DNA of 41,094 bases from Octopus sinensis (lineage: Eukaryota). Within the stretch, counting starts at the first letter, position 1, and every line of letters begins with the position of its first letter. The position numbers and the translations under genes are program-made. Under the pieces are notes generated by a model, which made no database searches, was not told the origin of the DNA, and saw only the letters and a program-made list of their open reading frames with translations. The DNA lies in contig NW_021835239.1 in the NCBI RefSeq assembly GCF_006345805.1, forward strand, positions 1 to 41,094, written 5' to 3'. Of the stretch, positions 2,541 through 38,648 are shown piece after piece.

Positions 2541-2648
2541 AATGAGTATAAAATTTAAAACTATTATATTTGTTATTATGCATAAAAATAAACAACCCTG
2601 TTTTTAACTGTTAGAGTAATTCCTGCTTTCCGAAAATCATCTCTATAT

Positions 2649-2785: not shown

Positions 2786-2786
2786 C

Positions 2787-2824
2787 TCATAAACCGAGGT
2801 TGTATCATAAACCGAGGTTCGCTG
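2787..2824. repeat. Duplicated 15-mer TCATAAACCGAGGTT resembling a Tigger/pogo terminal repeat
   Basis: Direct repeat at 2787-2801 and 2805-2819. The reverse complement of the second copy plus flank reads CAGCGAACCTCGGTTTATGA, which is pogo-TIR-like. Confidence 0.45.
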
Positions 2825-2885
2825 AAAACCTAATTAACAGTACTTTAAGTAAAAAATAGTTATAACAGATAGAACGGTTCATAAG

Positions 2886-7895: not shown

Positions 7896-8977
7896 GAATT
7901 TGTTGTTGTGGTGTTGTGCATGTCCGTTTTTATTAATAAGAAGAAAACGAATCCCATGGGCCTTTCTGCAGAATCAAATAATAAAAACACTATAGTGGAT
8001 GCAGGAGTGTTGTCTCTGGGGCTGGATAACGGCACAAGAACTAATATTAACAATAATCCTACAGTTGGAAGTCGTGCTGCACCAACTAACTTTCATTCCC
8101 TGTCCGCCATTATTAAGGATGTCAAGTGTGTCTCTGAGACTGAATGGGTGTCTCAGGTGTTCGATGCTATCAAAGAAAGATTTGGAAGGATGCCTAGAGG
8201 TGGCTGGGATCTCATTCTGAAAGAGTTCAATGAAAAATACTTAAAGTGCTCAAGTCTATATCAACTAAAAAAAATGGTCAAACCACCAAATGGGAATCAA
8301 AATGTAGGGAAAAGAGGCGATTGTAGTGAAGGAAAATCAAACATGAATATTGAAATTTCTAACTTCAAGAATTGCCTAGAAGAACTCAAAGTCCAACTCG
8401 AAAAAATCAAATCTATTCCTAGAGAGTCTCGAAAACCTACCCCAAAAATCCAAAAAATAAAGTGAAGACTAATATTCTGTCTGGATTGAATTCTGCAATT
8501 TATCGTATTACAGAAGATAATCCTCCACAAAATATGGATCAGATTACAGACATATTATATGCTGCACAGTGTGCTTATTTGGCCTTAACTATAAGACCTA
8601 AAACAAAAAGCACATGGTTGGAAAATACAGAAAACAAAATTTCGAAATTAGCAGCTGAAATTAAATTAGTGAATTCCTTTTCGAGACAAGCATTACCTCA
8701 ATCTGAAAAGAAAAATGTAATGGATATTCTTTGCCGCTACGGGTATAAGAAATCTAAAAAGGGAGAGCTAATGAGAATTGAGGCCTTAATGAATGATCTA
8801 ATCAGAATTAAAGAGAAACAAATATTTCATTCTATCTGAATTTCTTGACGAAGATATTAATTCGAGGAAAGAGTTCCGAAAAGACAATGCGTGCTTCGAA
8901 TTAAACCGCAGAAGGTTTTACCGAAACTTATCGTCGAATAATGAAGTAACCTTATATGGCTTGATGATGATGACTGT

Positions 8978-9883
8978 TTGTTATTCTGGGAGAACGTCTG
9001 GAGAAAGAAAAATATGGATCACGTTTCGTATAATTGTGTGGATGTGAGGTCTACCGGTGGTGAAGCTATGGAACCTCAATTCACAAATGAGTTGGTTAAA
9101 GATATGCTCAAATATGTGCCTGATTGGAAGGCGTGCGGATGCGATGGAACATATAACTTTTTCATCAAGAAAATGGAATCATTACATGAATTCTTGTGTA
9201 ATGAAGTAATCAGGATAATCAAGGGTGAGTACATGCCAGAGAGTTGGTTTTACACGGGATTAACTTACTTGATTCCAAAAAAGGATGATTGTGAGAATCC
9301 AAAGGATTTACGTCCTATAACGTGTATGCCAACTTTGTACAAGCTTGTAACGAAGTGTGTAAATGTTAAACTCTGTGACTTTGTGGATGGATTTGGGCTG
9401 ATTTCAGACAATCAACTCGGAACCAGAAAGCAATGTCAGGGTGCGAAAGAGCAAGCACTTATTAACCAATGCTTGAACAAGGAATATGGAAACAGTCTGT
9501 ACTCTTCTTGGGTGGATGTAAAGAAAGCCTTTGACTCGGTTGATCACCAATTTTTATTCCACATATTGGACAGCTCTGGAATTCCACTCTGGATTATTAA
9601 CTTTGTGAAAAGTATAGTCAAGAAGTGGAAAGTAAATCTACATCTTGATGGAAGAAAAATTGGTTCAGTAAAGCTAACCCGAGGAATTTTGCAAGGAGAT
9701 TCATTATCCCCATTGCTATTTGTTATGGTAATGGATCCCCTAAGCAGGATCCTGAACTTTAAATTTCCCAAATTGCAAATTAATCAGGAGGATCTAAATA
9801 TGTTGACATATTCTACCAATCACCTATTTTTTATTGACGATCTAAAGATATTTGCTCTTAAAGAGAAACTGTTATTAAAATGA
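8978..9883 (+). pseudogene. Reverse transcriptase domain of the R4-like element
   Basis: PDWKACGCDG, LRPITCMPTLYK, VDVKKAFDSV, GILQGDSLSPLLF, HLFFIDDLK. Confidence 0.92.
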
Positions 9884-11534: not shown

Positions 11535-12170
11535 CTAAAAGCCAACACTAACCCTAACCTAACCCTAACCCCAACCAAACCCTAATTCCAACCTAACCTT
11601 AACCCTAACCAAACACTAACCCTAACCAAACCCTAACCCTAATTGTAACCAATCCAACCCTAACCCTAACCAACCCCTAAGGCTTAACGTAACCAACCCT
11701 AACCCTAATTGTAACCAATCCAACCCTAACCCTAACCAACCCCTAAGGCTTAACGTAACCAACCCTAATCCTAACCAACCCCTAAGGCTTAACGTAACCA
11801 ACCCTAACCCTAATTGTAACCAATCCAACCCTAACCCTAACCAACCCCTAAGGCTTAACGTAACCAACCCTAACCCTAATTGTAACCAATCCAACCCTAA
11901 CCCTAACCAACCCCTAAGGCTTAACGTAACCAACCCTAACCCTAATTGTAACCAATCCAACCCTAACCCTAACCAACCCCTAAGGCTAAACGTAACCAAC
12001 CCTAACCCTAACCAACCCCTAAGGCTTAACGTAACCAACCCTAACCCTAACCAACCCCTAAGGCTTAACGTAACCAACCCTAACCCTAATTGTAACCAAT
12101 CCAACCCTAACCCTAACCAACCCCTAAGGCTTAACGTAACCAACCCTAACCCTAATTGTAACCAATCCAA
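11535..12170. repeat. Telomere-like (CCCTAA-rich) minisatellite with 66- and 39-bp units
   Basis: Unit AACCCTAACCCTAATTGTAACCAATCCAACCCTAACCCTAACCAACCCCTAAGGCTTAACGTAACC. Confidence 0.95.
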
Positions 12171-12318: not shown

Positions 12319-13346
12319 TCAGCTAAGCTTTTTTAATCTTGAAACATGTACGTCAGTAATCTTAGTTGTCTCATGAACAGTGGAGTTGTAATTAAATACA
12401 ATGTCTTTAAGAATGTCCAGATAACGTCCGAATTGATCACGTGACCCACTTGCGGAAGAAATCCATCTTTTAATCGATTGATTAAATCTATTTCTTTAAC
12501 GATAACTTTTAAACCTTTCAACTTGGCCCTGGATCCATGGAGCTCTTGCTCTGCCGAAAACATGTTTTATTGAATACTTTTCGCATAATTCATCCATAGC
12601 GGTATTCTTAAATTCCTTACCATTGTCCGTGTGCAAAATGACCGGAGGCCCTAATAGAACACTTATTGGAAATGGACTTACCAATATAATAAAACGCTCG
12701 CTGGAATAGACTTGTTATTTCTTCAACTGTCTTCGTTTTTGACATTTCCACAACAACATACTTGGAAAAAGAGTCTATAATTACTAAATCTAAAAATATA
12801 AATCGAATGTAATACCCAGCAAAAAGAATCATTTAGAGAGGAGTAACGTCTAAGATTTATCAAATCAGCGATGTATCTGTCACGAGGTCTCTTAGCGATT
12901 ATTAGAGTTATTTGAGGCTTTGTAGCCATCAATTTCTTTGACTAACAAATATAGATCAAAAAATACCTGACAAAATGAACATTTTGACACAATCTGAGCA
13001 ACTTCGGATCGGGCAACATCGTAATAACGATTACGAAGTTTGTCGAATAGACGATCTCGTCCAAACAAAGTGATCCATATTATGTTCTGACTGACCATGT
13101 TTAACAATAGCTAACCTCGATGTGTTTTAGCTTTAGCTCATATTCCTCGACCGCAAAAAAACGACGTTCAGTATCTTCATGTAAGATGTAAGTTTTTCCG
13201 TCTTTAAAGCGGAATAGATTCGAAATTTTTCTTAGTCTGTATCTTTTTTTCTTGTCGACATCTTTGAAAGATTTTGGATCGCGATCAGAATTAAGATAAT
13301 CCTTAATTTGTTCTAATTCTTCCAAAAAAAGCTTCACTAAAACCAT
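12319..13346 (-). pseudogene. Ginger-type (rve, HHCC) integrase/transposase copy A, five tiny introns, 3'-truncated
   Basis: Spliced product: MVLVKLF...HIE|SEHNMDHFGRDRL...CSFCQ|SKKLMATKP...PRDRYIADL...FCW|ILVIIDSFSK...YYIG|PPVILHTDNGKEF...QGQVER|FNQSIKRW. Introns at 13091-13115, 12942-12966, 12790-12815, 12651-12681 and 12488-12514. It has a 4-nt duplication (TTTG) and an inferred 1-nt deletion after the third intron. Confidence 0.88.
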
Positions 13347-13413
13347 GTGGCAAATTGAAATAATTATTTTTTTTATTAGTTATAATATGTCACCGTCCGC
13401 TGAATGGACCACG

Positions 13414-14638
13414 CCGTTGAGTGGACCGACAACTTTTTATTAAAATAAAAATGTAATTTTTATGAAATAGATGACAATTGAATTATTTTAAGTTAATAGA
13501 TAATATTATAGCTAATAAAAAAATTATTATTTCAAATTGCCGCATGGTTTTAGTGAAGCTTTTTTTGCAAGAAATAGAACAAATTAAGGATTATATTAAT
13601 TCTGATCGCGATCCAACATCTTTTAAAGATGTCGACAAGAAAAAAAGATACAGACTAAGAAAAATTGCTTATGACAACATTCTTGTGGCAGCGGACAAAA
13701 TGATAAAGAGACGAAAGTGGAAATACGACGAAGATGCGATAATTGAGGGAGATCGGGTGATTTTAAGAACTGATTTGGACTCAAATCGACCAAAGCTGCC
13801 TTGTAATGGAGACTTGTAAAGTTAGGGCTTAATAGGGGTTTCTGTCAAGTTAGAGTTGGTTTTAAAAATTAGGATTTAGTAAAAGTTTGATATTAATTGG
13901 ATTGGTTACAATTAGGGTTAGGGTTGGTTACGTTAAGCGTTAGGGTTTGGTTAGGGTTAGGGTTGGCTCTTAAAATTAGGCTTAATTATGTTAAGCGTTA
14001 GGGTTTGGTTAGGGTTAGGGTTGGCTTTTAGAATTAAACTTAATTATGTTAAGCGTTAGGGTTTGGTTAGGGTTGGCTTTTAGAATTAGGCTTAATTATG
14101 TTAAGCGTTAGGGTCTGGTTAGGGTTAGGGTTGGCTTTTAGAATTAAACTTAATTATGTTAAGCGTTAGGGTTTGGTTAGGGTTGGCTTTTAGAATTAGG
14201 CTTAATTATGTTAAGCGTTAGGGTCTGGTTAGGGTTGGCTATTAGAATTAGGCTTAATTATGTTTAGCGTTAGGGTTTTGTTAGTGTTTGGTTGGCTTTT
14301 AGAATTAACTTAATTATGTTTAGTGTTAGGGTTTGGTTAGTATTTGGGTTGGCTTTTAGAATTACGCTGATATTGTTAATTTAACTTACTAGTTTTTTTA
14401 AATAAAAGTAATTTTTTAATTAATTTGTAATGGATAACCACTAAAAATAATAAAAATACGTTAATTAATCAATATTCTTTTTAATTATTGGGTTTGTTGG
14501 TTTTGTACATATCTAATTTTTTCAGAAGTCACGAAAACCATTAAAAATAGCTTTAAGATGGGACTTAGAAAAATTAAGACATATTTTATACGGATAGAAT
14601 TAATAAAAATGACATTTTGAAATTGGTCCATTCAACGG
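13414..14638 (+). mobile_element. Internally deleted sister copy (A') of the integrase element, bounded by 14-bp TIRs and containing a telomere-like array
   Basis: CCGTTGAGTGGACC (13414-13427; second copy 13397-13410) versus GGTCCATTCAACGG (14625-14638), 13/14 inverted match. ORF from ATG 13544 joins the N-terminus of copy A directly to an integrase C-terminal segment (EGDRVILRTDLDSN). No TSD found. Confidence 0.7.
13900..14360. repeat. Telomere-like (TTAGGG-rich) minisatellite with 52/58-bp units
   Basis: Unit GGTTGGCTTTTAGAATTAGGCTTAATTATGTTAAGCGTTAGGGTTTGGTTAG(GGTTAG). Confidence 0.95.
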
Positions 14639-15824: not shown

Positions 15825-18800
15825 ATGCTTATCAAAATAAGTCATTTTGTGTGTTGTTTATATAATTCTTGTGGTGAGGTGAGTGAGCGAAATATAATGA
15901 AAGAAGAAAACTCCAAGACGATGGAAACTCTTCGGATAGTTGGGAGGGATCCCTCTATCTGTTATGGGTGTAATAAGATCAACACCAGGAAATGTGGCGT
16001 TTACTGTTCAATGTGTAATAAATTCTGGCATATTAGCTGCGCGCACCTTACCAAAGCCGCAGTGAAATTACTCCGGCGCTGGAGCTGCCACTGTTGTATG
16101 GCTTTACTCGGAATCGCGGCTTTGCAGCATCAGTCTCCTTCGCTTTATGAACCCAAATCAGAACACTATATTCTCAAAATTTCCAACTTACGGAAATCTA
16201 AGAAGATACCATTACGTATCCCTAAACAGGCTCGGATCTCAGCGGCAAACTGCTTGTGCGATCTTATCACTGATGCGCTAAGCTCCGGGGGGACCATTCT
16301 TGGATCCGTCTCCTCTCTTTTGCACCTTGTGTGTTTGGACAAGCAATTGATGGTTCAGTACAAAAGAAGAGTCTCTCGGCTGCCATTAAGTCGAACTCTG
16401 CGAGATTGGATGTCTCATGGATTGATTTCGATTGTGAAGCGACCAATTACCAAACGTGCATCACGGAAAAATCCCCCCAGTGGTTCAAAACCCAAGTTAG
16501 TCGTAAACTCATGGATGGCGACATCCGTGCGGCAGTTCGGGTCCTTTCGTCCGCTGATTCACTTGCTGAATCTACTGCCGAGACTTTGGAACACCTCAAA
16601 AACAAACATCCGATGCCCCCAGATGACTTACGGGAGTTTCCCACACGAGACAATGCAATTATACTGTCAATTTCTGATGATGAAATTTTGGAAGGGATTA
16701 AATCTTTCAGACCGAGTAGCAGTGGGGGATTTGATGGTCTCCGGCCGAGTCATATAAAGGACGATTTCCCGACTGACTATGGAGACTGGAATCCGCCTGA
16801 TCAAGTGTATTACCAAGCTTGTCGAACGGATTGTCAATGCTGAGATTTTAGGCTTTGCAAGGGATCTACTTTTCTGTTCACACCTTATTGCTTTCCGAAA
16901 GAACGATGAAGGAGTCCGCCCCATTGCAGTCGGTAATGTCTTCCGGAGGCTCGCATGCAAAATTGCAGCCCGAAGAGTCTGTCCCCGTGTTGCCGCTGAA
17001 TTATTCCAGTCCAACTGGGAGTTGGTGTTTCCAACGGATGTGAAGCTGCTGTCCACGCGACAAGAGCTTTTTTTTCACCTGACACAAGACATTCCCCAAA
17101 TTCCTTTGCGGTGAAGCTGGATATCTCAAACGCGTTCAACAGTCTGAGAAGGGACTGTATGCTGGAATCGTGCTCGCAGCGTACCCCAGAGATCATGAGT
17201 CTGGCTCACCTTGCTTACGGGTCCGAAAGTTCGCTTGTCTTTGACAAACACATTGTCCGTTCCACGGACTGGAGTCCAACAAGGTGACCCTTTTGGGCCC
17301 TACTATTCGCTCTGTCAATCGACGAGGTGGCTCGTAATGTAAAGACACCTCTCAACCTTTGGTACCTTGACGATGCCACTATTGGTGGCCCTGTTGATGT
17401 CGTCTTGGATGAGTTATATAAAATTGTTCCTGCCCTGGCAAAAATGGGGCTGATAATCAACACCAAAAAAACTGAGATCATAAATATCTCAGTCCCAATT
17501 CAAGACTTTGGCTTAGTAATGGAAAAGATTTCAGAAATCTTGCCAGACACAAAACAAACACGCCTCAACGATGTTTATTTTCTTGGGTGTCCTTTCGGAG
17601 AGTCCGAAGTGCAAAACCACCTCAGAGCTAAGAGTGTCGAAATGTCCCGTTTTACTGAACGCCTCTCTCTACTCGACTCCCACACGGCCTTTTTCCTCCT
17701 CAAAAATTGCATCCACGTGCCCAAACTGTTATATTTATGAGATGCTCGCCCTGCTTTATACAAGATGAAATATTGCATTCTATCGATGATACGTTAAGAT
17801 TGTGTGCCGAGTGGATCCTAAATGTCCGTTTCGATAATGATGGGTGGACCCAGTGTAAACTACCTCTTAATTCTGGCGGAGCTGGCCTAAGATCCGCCCT
17901 GGACCTTGCCCTCCAGCTTTCCTGTCCTCTCACTCATCCTGCCGAAGGCTATCCTTGGAGATTCTACATAAATCCCCCGAATCTTCTTTGGACAGGCCTT
18001 TTGAAGATGGATGTATGCTGTGGAAGGAATCAGGATTAAAATTCCCGATCCAAACATCACTCCAACAGAGCTGGGACAAATTACGCTGCGAATTCACCGC
18101 AGACAACCTGGCAATGAGGCTCGACCAGCACCGCCTCGCCTGCTTACGCTCTGCAGCTGTGCCACACAGTGGGTCATGGCTGAATGCTATGCCAATTGCT
18201 GGCCTCGGAACATTATTAGAGGATGACTGCATGCGTATCGGTACTGCACTGAGACTCGGACTTGACATCTGCGAACAACATCGTTGTAGATGTGGAAAAA
18301 TGGTTGACGTCAAAGGTGTACACCCACTCTCTTGCAAACGAAGTGCTGGCCGAGCTCCTCGGCACTCCGCTATTAACAATGTTATCTTAAGAGCTCTTGA
18401 GTCGGCGGGCTTCCTTCGATCCTAGAGCCAGTGGGCTTAGATCGTGGAGATGGGAAAAGACCCGATGGAATGACACTTTTCCCTACTCCTGTGGAAAATC
18501 GTTGGTTTGGGATTCAACGTGTGTTGACACCCATTCCAAAACTAATATGATCTCTTCTGCTGTTCTCCAGGTTCTGCAGCAGATGCTGCAGAGCAAAGAA
18601 AAATTGCCAAATACGCAAATCTTGGACAACGGTACCGCTTCGTACCTATCGCTGTGGAGACTTCTGGGGTAACCGGCCCTCTTACGACTTCTTTCATCAG
18701 AGAAGTCGGAGGAAAAGTTGCTAGGCGACGTGGGGAGCCTCGAGAAGTGTCATGGTTATTCCAACAAATTGGAATAGCTGTCGTTCGCGGCAATGCACAC

Positions 18801-18878
18801 TCCATCATGCGTGCAACCGCAAGTGCCTTTTAATCATTGACTAACTTATTTCAATAATTACTTTGAATAAAAAAAAAA
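15825..18878 (+). mobile_element. CRE-clade RLE non-LTR retrotransposon with N-terminal PHD finger, frameshifted
   Basis: C4HC3 finger (CYGC...CSMC...HISC...WSCHCC); RT motifs SSGGFDGLRPSH, RPIAVGNVFRRL, LDISNAFNS, QQGDP.GPLLF, WYLDD; RLE RGDGKRPDG...WDSTCVDT...AVETSG; AATAAA and A-tail at 18866-18878. Confidence 0.88.
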
Positions 18879-19269
18879 TTATATTAATTAAATATTTTAA
18901 TTAATTTTTTTAACTATTTAACACTTATTAAAAGGTCATATACAGTAAACCAAAATAAAAAACGAATACTACATTTTTCCTAAAATTTCCAAGAAACGAA
19001 TCAAAAAAATATCTAAATAGAATTTTAACAATATATAAACAATAACTAATATTTTTATTTTTGCAAAAAAATATATTTACCGCCTTTTTACAGCAAAAGT
19101 ATAATCTGAACCAAAATAAAAAACGAACAAAATTTTGTATTTGTAAATGTTATTAAATATGTGATTTTTTTAAAAATTATTAATATTTTGCACGCTATAA
19201 TAACTTATTATAGCCAGACAATTGAGTTTTGAAGAAAAGGGAACAATATCGGTATTTACAATTTCTAGT

Positions 19270-20029
19270 GTTTGGCGCTTGGGTCTTAACGGGTTTCTAA
19301 ATGTTACTCGTTTTGCTCTTTCGTCTGTTAAAACTTTTTTTCCGTTCACTTTTTAGAGCACCTACCTTGACGCTAGATTTTGTTTTCAACCCATCCGCGA
19401 CACTTTTAAAAATGTTTTTAAAGCTCGCGGTTTTTTCATTTGGGCATCAGTATGTCTTATCTTTTGTTTTTGCTTTTTACTCCTTTTGTTCTTCTGTGTG
19501 CTTTTGATTATCATTGTTATCTTGGATAAAATTTATTCAAGATCTTATCCTGCACTTGTGGCCTATGATGGTTCTTGGGATCATAACGATACGGGCTATC
19601 GACACTATGGTCTTGTTGCCCGTGTCCATGTTTTGCAGTGAACGTTTTAAACATCCCATAATTCCAATGAAACAATTAAAAGACTATTCATTCGTCAATT
19701 TCACATTGAACAACCTAACCCGCGCAAAACAAGCCACGCACATCCTGTGTGTTCTGGCTTTCGCTCCAAATTCAGGTCCGCGTTACGTTCATTCGCACAA
19801 CAACATGACCTTACACTTCATTGTTTTGAGGGCGCTCGTCCGGATGGTTATGCCAGCACTCGTGGTTGGCACGTTGCCCCGGACGTCACGATGCACGTCG
19901 TGGACGACCCAATTAACTCGATCTGGTCGAGCTTGTCGACGTGGATTACTACGTTGACTTGGCTGATATTTGTTGTAACTTGCGTCCCGTTTGCCTTTAT
20001 ACGGCAAACCCGAAGCTTACCGGTGGTGT
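19270..20029 (+). pseudogene. Nodavirus-like protein A endogenous viral element, part 1 (hydrophobic anchor and capping/methyltransferase domain)
   Basis: Hydrophobic stretch (FFIWASVCLIFCFCFLLLLFFCVLLIIIVIL), HPVCSGFR (H-x6-R, 19741), GWHVAPDV, LVDVDYYVDL (DVDYY at 19938-19952), RPVCLYTANP. About three frameshifts. The 5' boundary is approximate. Confidence 0.8.
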
Positions 20030-23000
20030 GTGTCAACTGAAAAAATGTGTCAACTGCGGTTCTTCGAGCCACTTGGCAAATTATCGGGGCTGTGAGAAAG
20101 CTAAAGAAGCTTCAAAGCTGAAAAATGATAAAATTCTGGTTCAGAAACTGTTAAAAGAAGCTTCGGAGAATGCTAAAATCAACCAAACAGACATAAAAAA
20201 TTTACCCTTGAAGCCATGGGCGGGATGGAACGTTCCAAGAGTTAAGAAAACAATTGAAGCTGGAACACAGACAGAGGAAACAACTATATCTCACTCGGCG
20301 GTGCAGACTTTGTCGACTTCAGGAGCTGGGTCAATGACGGGTCGACCTCGAGCTGACTTAATTAGTGAGCTCGAAAGATCTATTAAGGACGTGAGCAGAA
20401 CTAAAAAAGATGCCAAGCTTTTACTCGGTTTGGTGGCTCTCCTAAAAGAGGGAAGCAGCCACCAAATAAATCAAACGTGACCAGGATTACCCTGGTTAAT
20501 GCCCGCTCTCTTCGAAAGCGGGCAGCAGAGCTGATAGCTCTTATCAGCACAGTTCAGATGGATGTATTTATCATTAACAAGACGAAAATGAAGAAATCTG
20601 GAAGTATCACTATTCCTGGATACAGCTCGATTGATATTCCTTGGCATCCTGGTGCTAACGCCGGCACAGGAACATCAATATTTTACAAAAAGTCTATTGA
20701 CATTCGGAATCCAAGAATAATTGAACAAAATGTATGTGAATTAGCATCCATTGATTTAAAAACTTCTAATGGATGGATAACCGTTGGAGGTATATACTCC
20801 AAAAGGTTGAAAGATTATTCGTCGATTGTCAAAAATTTTATGGAAGGAAATGAAAATCCAATTCTTGTTGGAGACTTAAATGCGAAGCATACTGCATATG
20901 GGTGCGTGAAGTCAAATCAGGATGGAAATTGTTTACTTAAGATCAAAAAAACCTCAAATTTTCAAATTTTAACGTCTGAAGAGCTTAACCACTTTCAGCA
21001 GCAAGGTGGTGATCGATTAGGATTGTTTATTGTTGCAAATGCCTTAAGTGGTTTGTGTGACCGCCCTTATGTTGAAAATGATGTTGGGAGTGACCATCTT
21101 CCGCAAACGATGAAACTACGAACGGAAGCAGTTCTCACTGAGGATGTATTTCTTGGTTATAATATCAGCAACATTAATTGGAATCATTTTAACTTTTATA
21201 TGTCTATGAAATTGGCAAATACTCAAGAATTGAAAATACTAAATCTTGACGAGATCAATTATTTGGATGAAAGAATGAGGAACATTATTCGAAGTTATCT
21301 GGAGGACTATGGAAAAAAGAGGTTTCTCTTCTCGTACAAAAATCGATTGATAAATGAAGAGCAATCCAAACTACTTCGTGAAAAAAGGAACTTGGAAAGT
21401 AAACTAAAGCGGTGTTGGGACCCGCAAGACGCTATCTTCCTCAAACAAAGAATAAAATCGATTAAAAACTTATCAAAGGAATTATCTAAGGATATAGTAG
21501 AGGAGAGCTGGAAAAAAGAATGCTCTAAACTCTCTCACAAAAATCCGAATTTTTGGAAACTTTTCTCAAAGATGAGTTCTGATAAAAAGGGTGAAGAGAT
21601 AAAACTCAAGTCCAGTGATGGCAATCTGATTCCAAGAGAGGAAGTACCTGAGAAGTTAAAAGAGCAGCTAGCTAAGATTCAAGAAGTGCACCCTTTGTCT
21701 ATTATTTCTCAGACTATACAAAATGAGACGTGTATTTGGGAGTTACTATCGCTTACGGAGGGACCATTATGTGGAGCTATTTCTATGGAAGAAATCAAAT
21801 TAGCAATACACGGATGTAAAAATAAATCCCCTGGTTGGGACTACATACCGATGATTATCTTCAAAAAGGCGGGAATGCCTTTATTATGTGAATTATGGAA
21901 GTTATTTAACTCTTCGTGGAGTATTGGACATGTTCCCCAAGCATGGAAGAGGACAATTGTTCGCATGATCCCGAAGAAAGGAAAACCAAGTTCGGATCCT
22001 GCAAATTACAGACCAATCAGCCTCATATGTTCTATCTCAAAAATCATGGAAAAAATTGTCTTCAAAAGACTATCAACTTATATTGAAGATAAACAGTATC
22101 TCTTGAAAGAGCAATGGGGTTTTCGACGGAACAAGGGCACTGGAAATTGCTTTTCACTGTTAAAGGAGGCCATATCTACAGCACAAAGGAAAAAAGAGTA
22201 TCTTACGGCTGCATGTCTAGACATATCAAAAGCATTTGATAGCGTCTGGCATGCCGGGCTATTACGAACTTTATACAGTTTTAACGTTGGAAAGGCAGCC
22301 CTAGTTTGGATGAAGAGTTTCCTCTCGGAAAGAGAATCGTTTGTACGGGTCGGTAACCAATTATCGAAAGAGAATTTTGCTTAAGAGAGGAGTTCCGCAG
22401 GGATCTGTCATCAGTCCACTTTTATTTAACTGTGTGATGTGCGACATCCCTCAAGTGGATCTCCCTAGCATGGAGATGGTCATCTACGCAGATATTTTAA
22501 TTATGGATTTCTCTATGAGCAAATCAATATCGTGGAAAAGAACCCATTGTCATATCGAAAAAATTGGCAAATGGTGCCAGGATAAAGGCTTGTCTTTATC
22601 TTTTGAAAAAAGCACTGTTTGCTGGATCGGTGGAAGGAGAAGGAAACATGATGTTTGTATTAACACCGGAGCGATAAAACCCGTGGATGATCTTAAATAC
22701 CTCGGAAAAGTTGTGGATGCAACTGGTTCGTTCAATATGTATATAAGGAAGAGAAAGAACAAGGCTACCCAAATGTTGAAAGCTCTGATGCGATTCCAGC
22801 TAAAACCGGAAACGTTCTTATACGTATACTCTGCGTGTATAGAACCCTTCCTGATCTATGGATCTCAAGGATGATTCGGAAGCTGCAAAGGAAAGAAACA
22901 TATTGATCTTTTGGAGAAAACGCGGAGATATGCCATTAAACTGGCACATGGCTTAGACTTAAAATCCAAACTAACCCCAGAGCTGGAGGGATCGGTACGA

Positions 23001-23208
23001 TCCATTGAAAAACTGTTGCATCACTTAAATAAATAGTGGTGCAAGGGGTCGTTATTTTTATCGAGGGGACATCTGGTGTCCCATTAGAGTTGACCCCAAT
23101 CAGCAAACAAACTTGTTTCTTCCGTCTCCTTGGTTTCGTTTGGCTCTTCTCTCCCCTTTTAATCTAGTGACGAGTTTGTTACATAGAAAATAAACATTTC
23201 AATAGCAA
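20030..23208 (+). mobile_element. 5'-truncated APE-type LINE (I/Jockey-like) with 13-bp TSD
   Basis: TSD TTACCGGTGGTGT at 20017-20029 and 23209-23221. ORF1 zinc knuckle KCVNCGSSSHLANYRGC; ORF2 APE (VGDLNAKH, SDHLP) and RT (YRPISL, LDISKAFDSVWH, GVPQGS) with a frameshift near 22370. AATAAA at 23189-23194. Confidence 0.93.
20477..22874 (+). pseudogene. LINE ORF2 (AP endonuclease plus reverse transcriptase), frameshifted, YADD motif damaged
   Basis: ORFs 20477-22384 and 22341-22874. The second reads YADILI. Confidence 0.9.
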
Positions 23209-23221
23209 TTACCGGTGGTGT

Positions 23222-24150
23222 CCTTCCTGAGGGTGAAGGCTTCTATTACTTCGACCATGATAGTAATCTTGTGACTCAAATTAATGGTTGCTCTGTGTAT
23301 CGTCACCGCATTTACGATTTTTCAAACGACTATTTCGTCTGCTGAAATCGTAAAGGCTGGTTCAATTGGTTACTCAGCTTTTTCATAAATGTACAGACCG
23401 TAGTTCGTATAGATGTTTTAAATAACGATGATTACCACCAGGTTGTTTTACTAACACCTGTGAGAACCCTCTATGCTGACTTCGTTTCTCCCATCCAGAA
23501 ACAAATTGTTAAGCCTAAGAATTTGGTTTATGGTGATCTGGTCCTTCAATGGAACACTAGCGGGAACCACCTCGCTGTTTCCGTTTTATGCCAACACAAG
23601 TCCGTCCTCGTTCCCTACGAGTCTTTCTCTCGATTTCTTGCTTCGTTGTACTCGCCTAGTGATCCAAACCCGTCAAGTTGAGTTCAAGCACTTGACGATA
23701 GAGCTTCTCACTATTACATGTTGCATTTCGCGAACCATTATAGGCAAACCGGCATCAAACCCTCGATTCCTGTTTATTCTGGTTTGGACATTAAGCTCCA
23801 CACGGACGCTGACGATGAGCCCAAACCGGCTTAGCGTGAATATTGTCCAAAATTGACCGGTTCCAGCCCCAACATCACCGATCAACAGCTCAAAGACACC
23901 GTGACCCCTGCTTTATTTCGTTATAATAACTTTATGAGCGTGGTTGAGGTGTCCAAATTCGACCAATTCCTCCCTTACGTCGACAGTTATGTGGATTAAA
24001 TTCTTTCTTCATTGGGCGGTCGCACACTCGTCCCTTTTGAACCTGAGGACGTCTTTGCCAGACAGTCCAAAGCACTCCAACGCGCTCGCAATTCCATGTT
24101 GAATAATCTCGACCGTTACGTAGAACAACGTCTGTACACAACGTCGTCTG
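23222..24150 (+). pseudogene. Nodavirus-like protein A EVE, part 2; ends before the RdRp core
   Basis: One frame: LPEGEGFYYFD...VYRHRIYDF...DDYHQVVLLTP...DEPKPA*REYCP...LVPFEPEDVFARQSKALQRAR. In-frame stops at 23343, 23679, 23832 and 23997. Confidence 0.8.
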
Positions 24151-24949
24151 TAAGTCAATATTTTACAAAGATTTAAGAATTGTGAATAATAAAGAGATTA
24201 AAAAGTAATATTTTACAGATTTAATCAAATTTTGATCAAAGAAAAATACAATAAAATAAAGTTGATAAATCATGAAATATCAATAAAAATGTACAATAGA
24301 AAGAAAATCAATTAAAAAGATGCATTCAATTGAGATTAAACTAGTGTGACAATAGGCACAAATTAACTTGTAAAATAACTTTTTTCAAGGTATTCTACAT
24401 GTACCAAATATTTAATCAGCAATAAAATGCAAATAGAAAATTATACTTTAACAAATTTTGAATAAAAAGTAATAATCAACGTACAAAAACAAAACAAACA
24501 CAACAACAGGAAAGCGTGCAGAACACGCTATTGATAATAATTCGATATTTTTATTTATTTCAAAAAATAAATATTTTTAGAAAATATATAAGTTATAATT
24601 CGATAATTGATTATTTAACTTGATTTTTAAAAATCCTTGGAATAGAATTGTTTTTATTGTCCAAAAACCAAAACCTAACGAAAAAGGAGAAATCGTTAAC
24701 GAAAGATAAAAACAAAGCACTGAAGTCACTCTTTCAGTGTATACGCCAATTATAGTTATCAAATACAGATTTCCTTCAGGATCATCGGGATTGTGGGCGC
24801 AGAGGATACTTTGAGAGTCTTCAAAACTTCCTCAATTTGTCTCCGTAAGCCAATTTCACTACGAAACGTATTATGTCGCGACCCACGCTGGCGACCATCC
24901 CACGCTGGCGACCAGAGCGACCTTCATTGTTGACAAGATTGACAGGGCG

Positions 24950-25140
24950 ACCTACATAGTTTGACACTAATTACTGACATCGGCGAAAAGTCTCTTTCCT
25001 TTCTAAAAAAGCTTGGCCGCATGATCTCCCATAAACGGGGAGACCCACGCGAGTCCAAGTGGCTTTTCGAAAGGATTTCCTTGGCCATAGTACGTGGAAA
25101 CTGTGTTTCCATTTACGATGCCGGGAATTTAGTTAGTTAA
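24950..25140 (+). mobile_element. CRE-like retrotransposon C-terminal fragment
   Basis: IGEKSLSFLKKLGRMISHKRGDPRESKWLFERISLAIVRGNCVSI*, matching the C-termini of the other CRE copies in the window. Confidence 0.8.
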
Positions 25141-27778: not shown

Positions 27779-29839
27779 CAGTGATTCTCAAGTGCGGCCC
27801 CTAGGATTTAATTTGCGGCCCCTAGGTTTTATAAATGTTTTATTTTTTAATTTAATATTTTTAAATTTTATGAATAAAAAAATGTCACGTTTTTTATTTG
27901 TTGTTGTGATGTCTGATTCTAAACGTTGTCGAAAACTTTCCGAGGAAAATAGGATTTTTCAACACATCTGGGAAGAAAAATATTTCATTATTGAGATCAA
28001 TGGAAAGGCTCTTTGCCTAATATGCCATTCTATTATTGCAACTCTAAAAACGTATACAATCGAACGGCACTACCGTTTCCACTCTATTCTTTATGACAAA
28101 TTCACTGGTGTTTCTCGGACGAAAAAACTAAAACAAATGAAAGAAGATTATTTAAAACAATCATTTACTTTCAAAAGTGGCACATATTCGTCTAATATTA
28201 ACCTGGCATCATACAAAATTAGTTACCTATTGGCTAAAAATATGAAGCCTTATTCTGATGGCGAATTATATAAAACGGCAATCGAAATATTTGCATCGGA
28301 ATGTTGTTCGCCCGCTGTTTTCGATATTGCACACAAGTTACCTCTAAGTAACGATACTGTTACTAGAAGAGTCAGTGATATATCTGATAATCTGATTAAC
28401 GAACTTTTACAGTATGCAAATTGTTTTGTAATTTTTAGAATTTGTAAAGATTTTCAATATTATTCTTTTGCGCTTGATTGTTCCAAAGATATTTCAGATA
28501 TCGAACAATTAGTAGTGTTTATAAGGGGAGTAACATCTGACTTTCGAGTATACGAAGAATTTTTTTCATTGAATTCACTTCACGGAGAAACTAAAGGAAC
28601 ACAGATTTTTTCTCCAATTGTGAAATTAATTGAAGATTATCAACTGGATCCAAAAAAATTAGTTTCAATTTCAACTGATGGAGCCCCTTATATGATTGGC
28701 AGTAAAACTGGTTTTCGTGGACGTATGAATAAATGGAGGTGTGATAATAACTGGACTCCAGTATTATGGCATCATTGCATTATTCATCAGGAAAACCTAA
28801 TTTCCAAAAATATTAAAATGGAAAATGTTTCTGAAGTAGTGATAAAAATTGTCAATTGGATTCGGGCGAACGCCTTGAATCACCGAAAATTTAAAACATT
28901 TTTAACTGAAACCGATTCGGATTATGGCGATGTCCTTCTTTTCTCAGTAGTAAGATGGTTAAGCCGTAGCTCTTGTCTCAAAAGGTTAATTTCTTTTATT
29001 TTATATTTAGATTTTATCAACTTCTCCCTGAAATTATTTTATTCACTGAAAATAAAGTGGACAATGCATTATTGAAAGACAATAGATGGGTAGCAGATTT
29101 AGCATTTTATGTGGATCTATCGGTGCATCTGTCTGCCCTAAATGTCGAACTACAAGGGGAAAATAAGCTAAATTATCAAATTTATGGATATATAAATGCC
29201 TTCGTTAAGAAATTAATTTTATGGAAAGCGCAGATATCAAATAATGATTACACACATTTTCCTTATTTGTCAGAAAATTCCGAAAGTGGCTCAACTGATA
29301 AATATTTAAAAATAATTGAAGATTTAAATTTGCAATTTGATGCAAGATTTCAGGTTTTTAGTATTTAATTTAAGCTGACAGAGCTTTAAAGAAGGTGCAA
29401 ATTCAATGAGATTATTTGCATCTCCATTAATTATGAAAAGTGAGGAGGTTTCCGGGATTTACCAACTGGAATTGATTGATTTGCAAAATGATGTTGAACT
29501 GAAAAGTTTGTTCAACAACATTTCAATAATTGACTTTTATTCGAGAATTCCAGAGAACCGATTTCCGAATTTAGTCAATAATGCAAAGAAAAATTTAGCA
29601 ATGTTTGGATCAACATATGTCTGCGAATCGACATTTAGTAAACTCGTTCGAATTAAAACAAAGTTTCGCAGCAGATTGACTGATACTCATCTGAGTGATT
29701 TGTTACGTACTTCAACAAGTAGAATTAAACCTAATTTTGATTATTTGGTTAATAAATAATTCTTAAAAATTATTTGCGGCCCCTGTAAATTTTTTTTTTT
29801 AATTTGCGGCCCCTGAGCAAAAAAGCTTGAGAATCACTG
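27779..29839 (+). mobile_element. hAT (Buster/Charlie, GTF2IRD2/EPM2AIP1-like) transposon with perfect 14-bp TIRs
   Basis: CAGTGATTCTCAAG (27779-27792) and CTTGAGAATCACTG (29826-29839); subterminal TGCGGCCCCT repeats. The flanking 8-mers differ, so no TSD. Confidence 0.93.
27909..29759 (+). CDS. Apparently intact hAT transposase, 4 exons, 589 aa if started at ATG 27909
   Basis: Exons 27909-28411, 28439-28984, 29011-29353 and 29382-29759 total 1770 nt with no internal stop. Splicing restores ELLQ|ICKDFQYYSFALD, RWLSRSSCLKR|FYQLLPEI and ARFQ|SFKEG. Also contains STDGAP, HCIIHQE and STYVCESTFS. Confidence 0.85.
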
Positions 29840-31519: not shown

Positions 31520-33880
31520 CCAAGTCTGGTCTTTTCCAGCCTCGACAAAAGAGAGAACCTAATATGTAGAGCAACATTTTTATTGACTTAAAAAAAATAA
31601 AAATTGCCCTTAAAAAGTCAATGTAATTGACCTTAAAATTTTAAAAATTGACCAAATAATTGACCGTAAAAATACTACTTTATTTTCATATATAAACTAC
31701 GTTTATGAAAATTTAAAGTAATTTTATTCATCGTTTATCGAGTTATTTACAATTAAGTAATATTTTACATTATCCACTTTAAAATTCTTATCCTTGGTTA
31801 AGATTTTGTTAAGAATCGAAAATGATCGTTCTACTGTGCACGAAGTTGCCTGACATTCAATCAACAAAGAATAATCTAAAGGTGAAATGGAATGATCATC
31901 GAAATTCATAATTTTTGTGATATCATTGGAATTCATCCTTTTGATTTTTTATTCCACACACGTCTTCTTTAAAATCCAATGTTTTCAAATAATTGAATGC
32001 TTTTTTTATAGTAAAATTGGTCGATTCTAAATCATCAAGCAAATGTAATAAAGGTGAATATTGTGATATTATCGTCGTTAGATCTTCATGAAGTTGTTCA
32101 TTAAATAAACATTCTTTCGCTCTTTTAATGAGCAAAGAATTTCCTTCTAAGGAAGTGCATACTTGAATAACATTTGGCAGGTTTGTAGCATAGTAAGAAA
32201 CAGCTTTAAGCCAGCTTCCCCATCTCGTAACTATTGGTTCTGGTGGGTACCCAATTTCCTTAAACAATTGTCTTCGATAATTGTTTTTTACAACAAGTGC
32301 TTTGATACAAGCAATCAATTTATCAACTTCGGGATAATATACTTTTATTTTAAGTGCACAATTATGCACTAAATTAGCAAAACATGTGATATGGTATAGA
32401 GTGGAATATAATAGCTTGAGAGTATTTCCTGCAGAAACCATATATGGAGGAGCATCGGTAATAAGGAGAGAAAAATTGTTTCTTTCAACATTCATTTTCC
32501 GAATAGTGTCATCAATTATTTAGAAGAATTCGGAGAGGAATCAATTTTTATACAATCTATTAGGTAAGATCTTTGCGGATTTTCTAACGTTCCAACTAGA
32601 CAATTCACAAATTTGTTTCTCCCAACATCAGTTTCGTCCACAATCAAAAAAACCTTAACAATTATACTATTCCAATAGACTAACTTTCTTATTTGAAATT
32701 AAATTAATTATTTTAGATATCTTTTGTTGTGCTAAAATTTCTACCATATTGCGGCAAGTAAACTCTGAAGGAAGTGGATGCCCGATACTTCCAAATAAGT
32801 TGATAATTGCTCGATTTCTCAATTTATAGAGCGGAATGTTTGCGGATACAAATGCTTCTGTTACGTCTGTTGCAAAATTTCTGAAGACATAATTTGGAGG
32901 AACAATATTCAATTGTTTTTTATTTGTGGATATATTATTTGTTCGGGAAGAGTGTTTCTGTGTTTCCCTGTGTTTGTTCACAAAAAATTGTTTCTTGCAT
33001 GTCACATGTAACTCACATAATTTACAAAAAAGCATTCCATTTGGTGTAATTGTAAACTCTTTAGGATATTTTTCACAAATATTTTTAGCTTTTTTAAAAT
33101 CCGAAGGTTTATTTTTAGGCATAAATACACTATAATTTAGTTTAAAATTTGTTACAATAAGAGACAAATGTCACTGCGACTATTTTAAATTTATTTTGAT
33201 GCTTTAAAGAATATTATTTAAATTTTTATTTAAAAATTGACCTAATTAAAAAAATTGACCTGAAAATCTAAAAAGTTGACCAAATTGACCTAAAGAACTT
33301 TTTATATAAACTTTTTTTTGACTTTATTTTAATTTAATCATTATTTTTAGACTTAAGTCTAACTCTGGATTGAAGTTGACTTTATTGACTTATGTTGCCC
33401 TACTAATATGGCTTATTGAAGTGTTTGTGACTTCAATAGATAACTTAAAGAGTGTGGAAGTAGAAAAACTGCACAAATACGACATTTTAGCTAGTGAATT
33501 ACAACTGATTCACAAGGCTAGGGTGAAGATTGTGCCAATTGTTATTACGTGGAATGGAATCGTCTCAACAATCTACCGCAAGTACATGGAGCTCCTTGGG
33601 ATTGAAGAACGTGTTCGGTCTTACATCCAGACTGTAACGCTGAAGGCCACTCTGGAGAGCATGTTTGTCGAGTACAAGCATGGCTTCAGTGAAATCCTGG
33701 ACTCTGCAAATTCCGTAAATAGGGACTGGCGGAAATATAATTTCTCTATGAAGATCAGCAAGTCCCTTAAGAGACCCAAAGACTACACGCACCAGGAGGA
33801 GATTGAGGATAATGGCGGGGAAGATCAAAGTGGAGTCATGGGGAACTTGGAAAGCAAAAATTTGAGAATCGTCTAATTAT
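31520..33880 (+). mobile_element. R4-like endonuclease/3' fragment split by the hAT at 31567-33402
   Basis: Rejoined frame LDKRENLIW|LIEVFVTS...EKLHKYD...IVPIVITWNG...YIQTVTLK, homologous to 10821-11300. Confidence 0.8.
31567..33402 (-). mobile_element. hAT transposon of the CGGBP1-like type, decayed, with 8-bp TSD and one 31-nt intron
   Basis: TIR TAGAGCAACAT / ATGTTGCCCTA (10/11). TSD CTAATATG at 31559-31566 and 33403-33410. Motifs FCKLC, ANIPLYKL, VDET, LITDAPPYM, HITC..LVHN, PIVTRWGSW, VERSFS. Intron 32654-32684. AATTGACC subterminal repeats. Confidence 0.9.
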
Positions 33881-34472: not shown

Positions 34473-35435
34473 GGGCTTGCTAGGGGAACCAGTTTGGCTT
34501 GCTAGGGGAGACGGAAAGAGGCCTGACGGTCTATTCACCTTCCCATTCGAGTTTGGAAAATCGCTGATATTTTTTTTTTTTTTTTTTTTTTTTTTCAATA
34601 AATTTAATTTATACAAACAAGACAAAAATTACAGATAGCTAAGTTAGTTAAAGGCCTCACGAGACACCCGACCAGCCGCGCGAATGGCGAAGACGTTCCC
34701 TCGGATCACAGCAATCGACAGACGTTCCAGGAGCCAAGAAAACTCTCTTGGATCGTGACTAGTCCTTGAAATCCGTCGACCGAGCGAGCGAAGGAAGCGG
34801 AGTGTCTTGGGACCGAAGATCCCGGAGGACTCCAAGGCAATTGGAGTAAAGAGCAGCGAGTTGGACAGGTGGCCGTACTTGAGAATCTTTCGCTCCTCGG
34901 CCTGCCTGGAAGCGTGCCCAGGATTGGCGGCGGACAGCGCGAGATTTCCCAGCGAGAACGTGTCCGAGCAGGTAGAATCCCAAATAAGGGATTTCCCCTG
35001 CTCGTAGGGGAGGTGGACATGCCGTCAGGGCGTTTGCCATCCCCTCTACCATCGCTGATATGGGATTCAACTTGCTCAGACACTTTTTCCGAACAAAATC
35101 TTCCTCCTTCAGCTGTCGCAGCTGGCCCTGCTTCTTGCAGAGCAGAAGAATTAAAGATTTCAAAGTACACCAATCTCTCGGAACGCTATCTGTTTACCCC
35201 GATCGCCGTGGAGACCTCTGGCGTAATCGGTGACAGGTCACTCATTTTCCTCAAAAAGCTGGGTCGTCTGATTTCTCGCAAGAGAAACGACACGCGTGAG
35301 TGCGGATGGCTCCTTTAGAGGATTTCCCTTGCCATTGTGCGTGGAAACTGTTTCTCCATCTACGAGGCAAGGAAGTCCTCTTGTTAACTCTCTTTTCTCT
35401 CTGTTTTCTTTTATTACACAATTCATTATAAAAAA
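34473..35435 (+). mobile_element. 5'-truncated CRE-like element with 13-bp TSD, interrupted by a second CRE
   Basis: TSD AATTTGTGATATT at 34460-34472 and 35436-35448. Rejoined frame EPVWLARGDGKRPDG...GKSLI|WDSTCSDT...AVETSG...VRGNCFSI. Confidence 0.88.
34571..35050 (-). mobile_element. 5'-truncated CRE-like element with poly(A) tail and 11-bp TSD
   Basis: 26-nt T run at 34570-34595 on the + strand. TSD ATCGCTGATAT at 34560-34570 and 35051-35061. Minus strand encodes RGDGKRPDG...MESSGIFG...AVIRGNVFAI. Confidence 0.93.
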
Positions 35436-35733
35436 AATTTGTGATATTAAAACAAAGAGATAGAAGAAAAGCGTTAAGTCCCTGCGGCAAGGACGCAGTG
35501 TGCGTTGACACGAAACCTCGTACCATCCCTTTAGGGGAATTCTTGAAACCAAAAGACGAAGACTGGAAAATCCAAACTATCAAAAGGTCTACATGAGCGG
35601 AGGGCCAATCTTGCTGAACATGAATGTTAAAAATGGAAGTTGGAACTTTCGCAAGGAAGTATAGACCCTTTACAGTCGAATTAAAATAGAAATACATAAA
35701 GAATGACAAGGCTATAATAACACTCTGAACAGG

Positions 35734-36850
35734 ATGACGGAATTTAATCAAGACCTGGTAACGTCGAGTCTTGCTGTATTCTTCCTCAATGAATCCGTCC
35801 TCAATGTACACCTCGATGGTCCTGGATGGGCCCAATGCTCGCTCCCATTGAGATTTGGAGGTGCGGGAATCCGCACTGCATCCGATGTGGCACTTCCGGC
35901 ATATCTATCCTCCCTTTCGATGTGCAACAACCTGGCCTCTGAGATCCTACTCAAACCTTTCTGATCTTGCCTGGACGGTGCTTTGTCGGATGGGCTTATT
36001 TCCTGGGATCGCTCCTTTTCTGAGAGGCCTGGTGATTTCTCCTCCCAAAGGTGCCTGGGACACTATCGCATGCCGAACGTGTGTGTCTGAGCTCTCGGCA
36101 ACCCTTGACCAACATCGCCTGCCATGCCTTCGTGCGGCATCCGCCCCTCACTCTGGCAACTGGCTGAATGCTCTCCCTCTCTCCAGTATCGGGACGTGGT
36201 TAGACGATGCTGCCATACGATTCGGAGTCGCTCACCATCTCGGCCTGGATGTTTGCGTAAAATACCGCTGCAGATGCAGTAAGGACGTTGACGAAAAGGG
36301 ACTACACCCACTTTCCTGCAAGAGGAGCGCAGGCAGGGAACACAGACACAAGGCCCTCAATGGAATCGTGAAGGCCGGTCTCGAATCGGCAGGCCATTCG
36401 TGCCTCCTCGAACCGGTCAAACTCGATCGGGGAGACGGCAAAAGGCCTGACGGGATGGCAATATTCCCGTACTTGTCAGGGAAGGCCCTCGTATGGGATG
36501 TTACCGTTGTGGATATCTTTTCAAAGTCGAGGATCCATTCTTCCGCCGCGAACACTTGTTCGGCTGCAAACCACGCTGAAAAGATAAAAATACAAAAATA
36601 TTCTTCGCTCGCGGACCGCTACCGCGTTACGCCAATCGCCCTGGAACCGCGGGAAAGGAGACTGACTCGTTCCTCAAAGAGGTCGGGAAGTCCATCGGGA
36701 AGAGGCTCAAGGACTCGAGAGAGGGCCTCTGGTTCCGCCAGCGCATCGGCCTGGCCATTGTTCGGGGCAACGCACACTGCGTCCTCGCCGCTGGAACTTA
36801 ACGATTTTCGGTGTTAGTTGTTTTTTTAAATAAAAAAAAATGCAAAAAAA
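35734..36850 (+). mobile_element. CRE-like element, 3' third
   Basis: WAQCSLPLRFGGAGIR, PHSGNWLNALP, RCRC...HPLSC, DRGDGKRPDG...WDVTVVD; A-rich tail at ~36829-36850. Confidence 0.85.
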
Positions 36851-38399: not shown

Positions 38400-38648
38400 A
38401 TTGTTTTAAAATTATTTTTAATAAATCCCTGTACAAATTGAAAAATAGTAGATTGAAAGTATGTTGAGATAGTATCTGTATCAAAAATGCCGCGGCCGAA
38501 GGCCGCATAGGGGAATAGTAGCTATCTTAAAAATTTCGGCCGAAGGCCGTTAGGTAGGTAAGGCTTTATTTGATCAGAAAATCTCTTCTGTATTAACATA
38601 AAAATAAATTAAATTTAAAGGAACTTCAGCTATTGTCCAAATAAGAGA

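What the first reader, a model, noticed from the sequence alone, without database searches (positions are those of the whole stretch)
19270..24150. Endogenous nodavirus-like RNA virus gene split cleanly by a LINE
Seen: removing 20030-23221 (the LINE plus one TSD copy) gives a continuous frame DVDYYVDLADICCNLRPVCLYTANPKLTGG|VLPEGEGFYYFDHD...YRHRIYDF. About 1.7 kb covers a membrane anchor, the capping domain and the linker up to just before the RdRp core. The region is visibly more GC-rich than its flanks. Knowledge: H-x6-R and DVDYY are hallmarks of the nodavirus protein A methyltransferase-guanylyltransferase; (+)RNA viruses lack a DNA stage and need a host RT to integrate. Inference: a fossil of a divergent noda-like virus that infected this host's germline before the LINE insertion.
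Basis: partly seen in the sequence, partly recalled or inferred. Interest (0 to 1): 0.8.

Follow-up and report, generated by a model that had tools for sequence, protein, structure and literature searches.

The report
Noda-like virus fossil split by LINE
A decayed DNA copy of the front 1.76 kb of a nodavirus-like RNA virus replicase gene sits in this animal genome and was later cut in two by a jumping gene; this is a real but ordinary kind of viral fossil.

Summary
A GC-rich block (19210-24176, + strand) is interrupted by a 5'-truncated LINE (20030-23208) flanked by an exact 13-bp target-site duplication (20017-20029, 23209-23221; none expected by chance). I searched the pieces apart and never joined them. 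Three stop-free pieces hit one Pfam family, PF19222 (nodavirus methyltransferase), in collinear order: profile 3-70 and 74-108 left of the LINE, 111-145 right of it. The piece abutting the LINE also matches Flock House virus protein A (PDB 8fm9_A, residues 160-191). Both duplication copies are read in the same codon phase, so the frame runs across the empty site. A very hydrophobic stretch lies upstream, where a membrane anchor is expected. About 280 codons downstream still look like a decayed ORF (5 stops against about 16 expected) but have no detectable homologue, so "Iceberg/linker up to the RdRp" is inference. The viral gene is dead: at least eight point breaks, the LINE insertion and no polymerase half. 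No second copy, RdRp or capsid is in the window. The host is probably a mollusc (weak evidence). Noda-like endogenous viral elements are already known, so this is a new member of a known kind, of modest interest.

The parts
19210..24176 (+). Endogenous viral element: decayed copy of the 5'-proximal ~1.76 kb of a noda-like RNA1 replicase (protein A-like) gene. It is one broken gene, interrupted by the nested LINE and lacking the polymerase half.
   Evidence: GC 0.42/0.44 against flanks 0.17/0.22, and stop depletion in one frame on each side. Three collinear PF19222 hits. PDB 8fm9_A hit. Breaks: at least 3 in-frame stops and at least 1 frameshift left of the LINE, 4 internal in-frame stops right of it, 1 LINE insertion, 3' truncation.
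19429..19524 (+). Candidate N-terminal transmembrane anchor (about 32 hydrophobic residues).
   Evidence: The 19-residue Kyte-Doolittle maximum is 3.64, the highest of 192 stop-free segments of at least 60 aa in the window (99th percentile 2.37). It lies upstream of the capping domain, as the anchor does in FHV protein A (PMC7414174). Inference only.
19720..23339 (+). Nodavirus-type methyltransferase-guanylyltransferase (capping) domain, outer bounds of the PF19222 matches (profile 3-145 of 148). It contains the LINE.
   Evidence: E 2.3e-3, 9e-7 and 5.2e-5 for three pieces searched apart (18.1 + 29.1 + 23.4 bits); 8fm9_A residues 160-191, E 0.008, 17 of 31 residues identical.
23340..24176 (+). 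Decayed continuation of the same reading frame (about 280 codons). It is inferred to be the Iceberg/linker-equivalent part of protein A. No homologue was found.
   Evidence: The whole right part has 5 stops in 318 codons against 15.7 +/- 3.8 in shuffles, fraction of shuffles at or below this 0.001. No hits. AF2 pLDDT 39.
20017..20029 (+). Target-site duplication, left copy.
   Evidence: sequence.
20030..23208 (+). 5'-truncated non-LTR retrotransposon (LINE) nested in the viral element, same orientation, no poly-A tail.
   Evidence: APE (PF14529, PF03372) and RVT_1. It begins inside an ORF1 Cys/His knuckle. Best relative is an Octopus sinensis protein at 43% identity, 423 bits.
20030..20480 (+). 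LINE ORF1 remnant (C-terminal part). It happens to be in frame with the viral piece upstream, which gives a chimeric 179-aa ORF.
20477..22874 (+). LINE ORF2 (APE endonuclease + reverse transcriptase), broken once by a frameshift.
   Evidence: RVT_1 profile 1-107 in one ORF and 111-202 in the next, in different frames.
23209..23221 (+). Target-site duplication, right copy.
   Evidence: sequence.

Best explanation
This is a non-retroviral endogenous viral element. RNA1 of a (+)RNA virus with a nodavirus-type replicase (order Nodamuvirales or a noda-like relative) was partly reverse-transcribed by a host retroelement enzyme in a germline cell. The cDNA covered roughly the first 1.76 kb: a short leader, an N-terminal membrane anchor, the methyltransferase-guanylyltransferase capping domain and the region after it. 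It stopped short of the polymerase and was integrated (inferred). The copy then decayed neutrally, with at least seven in-frame stops and at least one frameshift. Later a LINE inserted into the capping domain by target-primed reverse transcription, leaving a 13-bp target-site duplication and a 5'-truncated LINE (shown). The element cannot encode a working protein. If it has any present role, it would be as RNA, for example as a small-RNA source in this transposon-rich stretch (speculation).
For: Three independent, collinear hits to PF19222 cover profile positions 3-145 of 148, and the profile runs on across the LINE. There is a hit to solved FHV protein A residues 160-191, inside the capping core of about 91-215 (domain map from PMC7414174). 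No other window ORF hits that family. The duplication is exact with none expected by chance, and both copies are read in the same phase. The LINE carries APE and RT domains. Stops are depleted in one frame on each side, and GC is twice that of the flanks. The hydrophobic stretch is the most extreme in the window and sits where the anchor is expected. The LINE is less decayed than the viral gene (one frameshift in about 800 codons), as the nesting order requires.
Against: Only about 145 of about 590 codons have detectable homology, and each Pfam hit alone is below the 30-bit curated cut-off. The downstream 280 codons found nothing in Pfam, the PDB, the 5.8-billion word search (which only sees proteins of similar length), a 1.84-billion phmmer scan (its single hit, P0027, is a tandem-repeat artefact), IMG/VR or JGI contigs. 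The element itself has no duplication, poly-A tail, LTR pair or adjoining retroelement that would show how it integrated. The host species and orthologous loci are unknown. No start codon can be assigned.
Confidence: 0.85

Rival explanations
1. Only the capping domain (about 145 codons) is viral. The roughly 280 codons downstream, and perhaps the hydrophobic stretch upstream, come from an unrelated host or transposon ORF that lies alongside or was co-integrated.
For: No search finds any homologue for the downstream pieces. The single-sequence structure model is useless.
Against: The downstream part continues in the same frame as the last Pfam-matching piece, with the same GC (0.44) and the same degree of decay. 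GC drops sharply to 0.22 only at 24176. In FHV the region after the core is the Iceberg region (PMC7414174); from my own knowledge it is poorly conserved among noda-like viruses. Total length fits a protein A N-terminal half.
Confidence: 0.1
2. The source was not a nodavirus relative in the strict sense. It was another (+)RNA virus lineage, or a virus-derived selfish element, that carries a nodavirus-type capping domain, so the label 'noda-like' overstates the affinity.
For: No close relative was found anywhere. The polymerase, which is the marker used for classification, is missing. Identity to FHV is confined to one 31-residue stretch.
Against: PF19222 is the only family hit. The general alphavirus-type methyltransferase families did not appear even at E up to 1. 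The order anchor, capping domain, long spacer is that of protein A (PMC7414174).
Confidence: 0.12
3. This is an artefact: either exogenous viral cDNA or reads mis-assembled into the genome, or chance matches.
For: None beyond the general risk with draft assemblies.
Against: A host LINE with an exact duplication sits inside the viral sequence. The gene carries many inactivating breaks. Three collinear hits to one of 24,736 families cannot arise by chance.
Confidence: 0.02

Closest known systems
eBxnv-1, the endogenous nodavirus-like element of the nematode Bursaphelenchus xylophilus (PMC5177903)
   Same: Both are genomic DNA copies of part of a noda-like RNA1 replicase gene in an invertebrate. 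Both are single-copy and divergent from sampled viruses.
   Different: eBxnv-1 keeps the polymerase part as an open 570-aa gene model, lies inside a Bel/Pao LTR element, is transcribed and is recent (polymorphic among strains). The element here keeps the opposite, N-terminal capping half. It is heavily decayed, has no LTR pair around it, was itself hit by a LINE, and its host is not a nematode (TTAGGG-type repeats; LINE relative in Octopus).
Flock House virus protein A (PDB 8fm9/8fma/8fmb; domain map in PMC7414174)
   Same: The order N-terminal hydrophobic anchor, MTase-GTase core, long following region is the same. There is a direct sequence match to residues 160-191 and to the Pfam model built on this family.
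   Different: The element has no polymerase domain. The region equivalent to Iceberg is unrecognisable by sequence. The stretch before the capping domain is longer than in FHV. The gene is not functional.
Non-retroviral EVEs of arthropods and other animals, often embedded in transposon-rich, piRNA-producing loci (e.g. PMC7522710)
   Same: It is a partial viral ORF in a transposon-dense region, in the same orientation as most neighbouring transposon remnants.
   Different: No small-RNA or expression data exist here, and the host is probably a mollusc. (+)RNA virus EVEs are, from my own knowledge, less common than those of negative-strand viruses.
Nested LINE insertions by target-primed reverse transcription
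   Same: It has an exact 13-bp duplication, 5' truncation and APE + RT coding capacity.
   Different: There is no poly-A tail, as in CR1/L2/RTE-like clades (from my own knowledge). The clade was not resolved.

Membership tests
Nodavirus-type capping domain (Pfam PF19222 Noda_Vmethyltr) | Match to the family profile over its length, in order | tested here: met
   profile 3-70, 74-108 and 111-145 of 148 from three pieces searched apart. No other family competes.
Nodavirus-type capping domain (Pfam PF19222 Noda_Vmethyltr) | Score at or above the curated 30-bit whole-protein cut-off | tested here: inconclusive
   Single pieces give 29.1, 23.4 and 18.1 bits. The cut-off is meant for one uninterrupted protein, and the pieces may not be joined. 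A simple sum would be 70.6 bits.
Nodavirus-type capping domain (Pfam PF19222 Noda_Vmethyltr) | Catalytic residues of the methyltransferase-guanylyltransferase present | not tested
   The motif letters in the finding come from memory and were not used, and the family tool prints no residue-level alignment. The only residue-level result is 17 of 31 identities to 8fm9_A 160-191.
Nodavirus protein A (full replicase) | N-terminal transmembrane anchor before the capping domain | tested here: met
   Hydropathy maximum 3.64, the top of 192 segments, at the expected position. This is physico-chemical evidence only.
Nodavirus protein A (full replicase) | Iceberg region after the capping core | tested here: inconclusive
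   The ORF-like signal continues in frame, but no homology was found.
Nodavirus protein A (full replicase) | [quoted passage not shown] | tested here: not met
   The block ends at 24176. No RdRp family hit in any window ORF of at least 110 aa. So this is a fragment of such a gene, not a complete member.
Endogenous viral element (non-retroviral) | Virus-derived sequence physically inside host chromosomal DNA | tested here: met
   It is interrupted by a host LINE with a duplication. It is surrounded by host transposons, satellites and a U2 snRNA gene.
Endogenous viral element (non-retroviral) | Germline fixation or presence at the orthologous locus in other individuals or species | not testable with these tools
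   The host genome is not in any searchable collection.
LINE insertion by target-primed reverse transcription | Target-site duplication, 5' truncation, APE + RT | tested here: met

The most novel reading that the evidence does not exclude
This may be the first noda-like viral fossil described from a mollusc (possibly cephalopod) genome. It would derive from a lineage with no sampled living relative and preserve the capping half rather than the polymerase. It would sit in a mostly one-stranded transposon graveyard that acts as a small-RNA (piRNA) source, so its transcripts could still guide silencing of related viruses.
Probability: 0.15. Interest if true: 0.55.

Novelty: new member of a known kind. 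Interest (0 to 1): 0.35.

Why it matters
EVEs from positive-strand RNA viruses are minimum-age markers for virus-host associations, and noda-like ones are few. This one shows that a virus with a nodavirus-type capping enzyme once reached the germline of this (probably molluscan) lineage. The nested LINE gives a relative time order that could be dated once orthologous loci are available. It is also a clean textbook example of nested insertion. It reveals no new mechanism.

Tried and rejected
1. Homologues of the longest downstream piece (111 aa). The word-indexed search found none. The exhaustive phmmer scan gave one hit, P0027, which is an 869-aa tandem-repeat protein with 13 weak stretches and no Pfam domain, so I rejected it as an artefact. 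IMG/VR and JGI contigs gave none.
2. Homologues of the N-terminal capping piece: none. The 37-aa piece was too short for the locus tool.
3. PDB sequence searches of the other pieces gave only noise at E of 0.2 or above.
4. A single-sequence AlphaFold2 model of the 111-aa piece had pLDDT 39, so I ran no fold search on it.
5. I looked for a second copy or a polymerase or capsid part in the window. blastn and tblastx of both viral parts found nothing, and no viral Pfam family appeared in any other ORF of at least 110 aa.
6. I looked for marks of the element's own integration. There is no duplication (longest shared word 9 nt), no poly-A tail, no repeated flanks and no LTR pair.
7. Host identification by exact protein look-up failed.
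8. I did not use the motif letters quoted in the finding and fetched no viral comparator.
Full report
**What is in the sequence.** Between two very AT-rich flanks (18840-19209, GC 0.17; 24177-24700, GC 0.22) lies a GC-richer block on the + strand. Its outer parts are 19210-20029 (GC 0.42) and 23222-24176 (GC 0.44), and the middle is 20030-23208 (GC 0.39).

The middle is a non-LTR retrotransposon:
- It has an ORF1 tail with a Cys/His knuckle. An ORF2 follows, carrying an APE-type endonuclease (PF14529, PF03372) and a reverse transcriptase (PF00078).
- ORF2 is broken once by a frameshift, because the two RT halves lie in different frames.
- The element starts inside ORF1, so it is 5'-truncated. 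It has no poly-A tail.
- It is bounded by the exact 13-mer TTACCGGTGGTGT at 20017-20029 and 23209-23221. These are the only two occurrences in the window, with 0.00 expected.

This is the signature of target-primed reverse transcription into a pre-existing sequence.

**Is the interrupted sequence viral?** I searched the stop-free pieces apart and never joined them.
- Of nine pieces from the two outer parts, three hit one and the same Pfam family, PF19222 Noda_Vmethyltr, and nothing else of note.
- One piece left of the LINE hits profile 3-70 (E 2.3e-3, 18.1 bits).
- A second left piece, in another frame and abutting the LINE, hits profile 74-108 (E 9e-7, 29.1 bits).
- The first piece right of the LINE hits profile 111-145 (E 5.2e-5, 23.4 bits).
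- The hits are collinear, cover 3-145 of 148 profile positions, and run on across the insertion.
- About 40 other window ORFs gave no hit to this family. The one exception is the chimeric ORF that contains the same abutting piece.
- The abutting piece also matches PDB 8fm9_A, deposited as 'RNA-directed RNA polymerase' (1011 aa, entries 8fm9/8fma/8fmb), at residues 160-191 (E 0.008, 17 of 31 residues identical).
- I take that chain to be Flock House virus protein A from my own knowledge of the entry. The residues fall in the MTase-GTase core, about 91-215 in PMC7414174.

**Frame across the empty site.** The left duplication copy is read by the Pfam-matching frame as T-G-G followed by a codon that begins with the last two duplicated bases. 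The right copy is read in exactly the same phase by the Pfam-matching frame there.

**The rest of the block, upstream.** One frame of the left part has 3 stops in 273 codons against 13.4 +/- 3.4 expected. It contains a run of about 32 hydrophobic residues (19429-19524). Its 19-residue hydropathy maximum of 3.64 is the highest among all 192 stop-free segments of at least 60 aa in the window (99th percentile 2.37). Its position before the capping domain matches the N-terminal transmembrane anchor of protein A (PMC7414174). This is consistent with a membrane anchor but is not proof. No start codon can be assigned.

**The rest of the block, downstream.** The frame of the last Pfam-matching piece carries on to 24176. 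The whole right part has 5 stops in 318 codons against 15.7 +/- 3.8 expected, and only 0.1% of shuffles are as low. It is therefore a decayed ORF. None of its pieces has a detectable relative:

| Search | Result |
|---|---|
| Pfam | none |
| PDB sequences | none |
| Word-indexed 5.8-billion set (only sees proteins of similar length) | none |
| Exhaustive scan of 1.84 billion representatives | only a tandem-repeat artefact, P0027 |
| IMG/VR | none |
| JGI contigs | none |
| Single-sequence structure model | pLDDT 39, unusable |

By length, about 280 codons after the core would span the Iceberg region (about 216-391 in FHV) and reach the approach to the polymerase.

**State of the gene.** It is dead. 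Left of the LINE there are at least three in-frame stops and at least one frameshift. Right of it there are four internal in-frame stops. Add the LINE insertion and the absence of the polymerase half.

A note on my working: to cut the queries I worked out the bounds of neighbouring pieces, and in my reasoning I noted between which two query bounds one break falls. That goes beyond counts. I stopped there, and it is repeated neither here nor in the notes.

**How it got there.** The LINE step is shown. The integration of the viral cDNA itself is inferred. A (+)RNA virus has no DNA stage, so a cellular reverse transcriptase must have copied RNA1. The copy seems to include the 5' end and to lack the 3' 40-50% of the gene. 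That pattern suggests internal priming or template switching rather than priming at the RNA's 3' end.

I found no duplication, poly-A tail, LTR pair or fused retroelement at its borders. This differs from the Bursaphelenchus element, which lies inside an LTR retrotransposon (PMC5177903). The mechanism stays open.

**Context and host.**
- The window is a transposon and satellite graveyard. It holds a pogo-type transposase, three or more non-LTR elements, two hAT-like remnants, an LTR-type integrase/RT, a 75-bp satellite and a U2 snRNA gene.
- The nested LINE's best relative by far is an Octopus sinensis protein (43% identity, 423 bits, against 141 bits for the next hit).
- The window holds TTAGGG-variant satellites. 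From my own knowledge, that hexamer is the telomere type of molluscs and vertebrates, not of arthropods or nematodes.
- The host is thus probably a mollusc, possibly a cephalopod, but this is weak. Exact look-ups did not find the genome.
- Seven of nine transposon coding remnants and the viral block share the + strand. That is compatible with, but does not show, a one-stranded small-RNA cluster.

**Comparison and novelty.** Endogenous noda-like sequences have been known since 2016 (PMC5177903), and EVEs nested with transposons are common. What is particular here:
- The capping half is preserved rather than the polymerase.
- The divergence is strong.
- The nested LINE is clean.
- The host is probably a mollusc.

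This is a new member of a known kind: the finding is correct and nicely resolved, but of modest interest.

Noticed in passing
window 76-2541: A 75-bp satellite of about 33 copies at about 92% identity, with strong C-over-G skew. It creates long spurious ORFs in two frames (727-2262, 1050-2558).
   Followed up: partly
window 2649-2837 (+): A full-length U2 spliceosomal snRNA gene (95 bits against a gathering score of 46). It sits between the satellite and a pogo/Tc5-type DDE transposase remnant (2886-4040, - strand).
   Followed up: no
window 11544-12170 and 13928-14368: Two satellites built from telomere-like hexamer variants, shown as CCCTAA at the first site and TTAGGG at the second, so in opposite orientation. 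A 150-nt inverted repeat (13224-13373 / 13517-13666, 95% complementary) lies between them. This may be an interstitial telomere-like structure or the ends of a large element.
   Followed up: partly
window 15825-18830 (+) and 34700-36817 (+): Two GC-rich (0.44-0.51) copies of one element family, 55% amino-acid identity over 116 residues. They share a Cys/His-rich C-terminal domain and a visible RT-like stretch, yet have no Pfam hit at E of 0.01 or below. This may be a retroelement lineage poorly covered by Pfam. The first copy ends about 370 bp upstream of the viral block.
   Followed up: partly
window 19941-20480 (+): The last viral piece before the LINE and the LINE's ORF1 remnant happen to be in frame. 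This gives a 179-aa chimeric ORF, most likely a coincidence.
   Followed up: no
window 24979-25127 and 35226-35374: A 149-bp stretch repeated at 69% identity. It is an unclassified dispersed repeat.
   Followed up: no
window 7908-9883, 27792-29759, 31923-33167, 37626-40040: Further transposon remnants: a second LINE RT, two hAT-like elements (Spin-doc zinc finger, DUF4371, hAT dimerisation domain, DUF659) and an LTR-type integrase plus RT. Most are on the + strand, like the viral block.
   Followed up: partly
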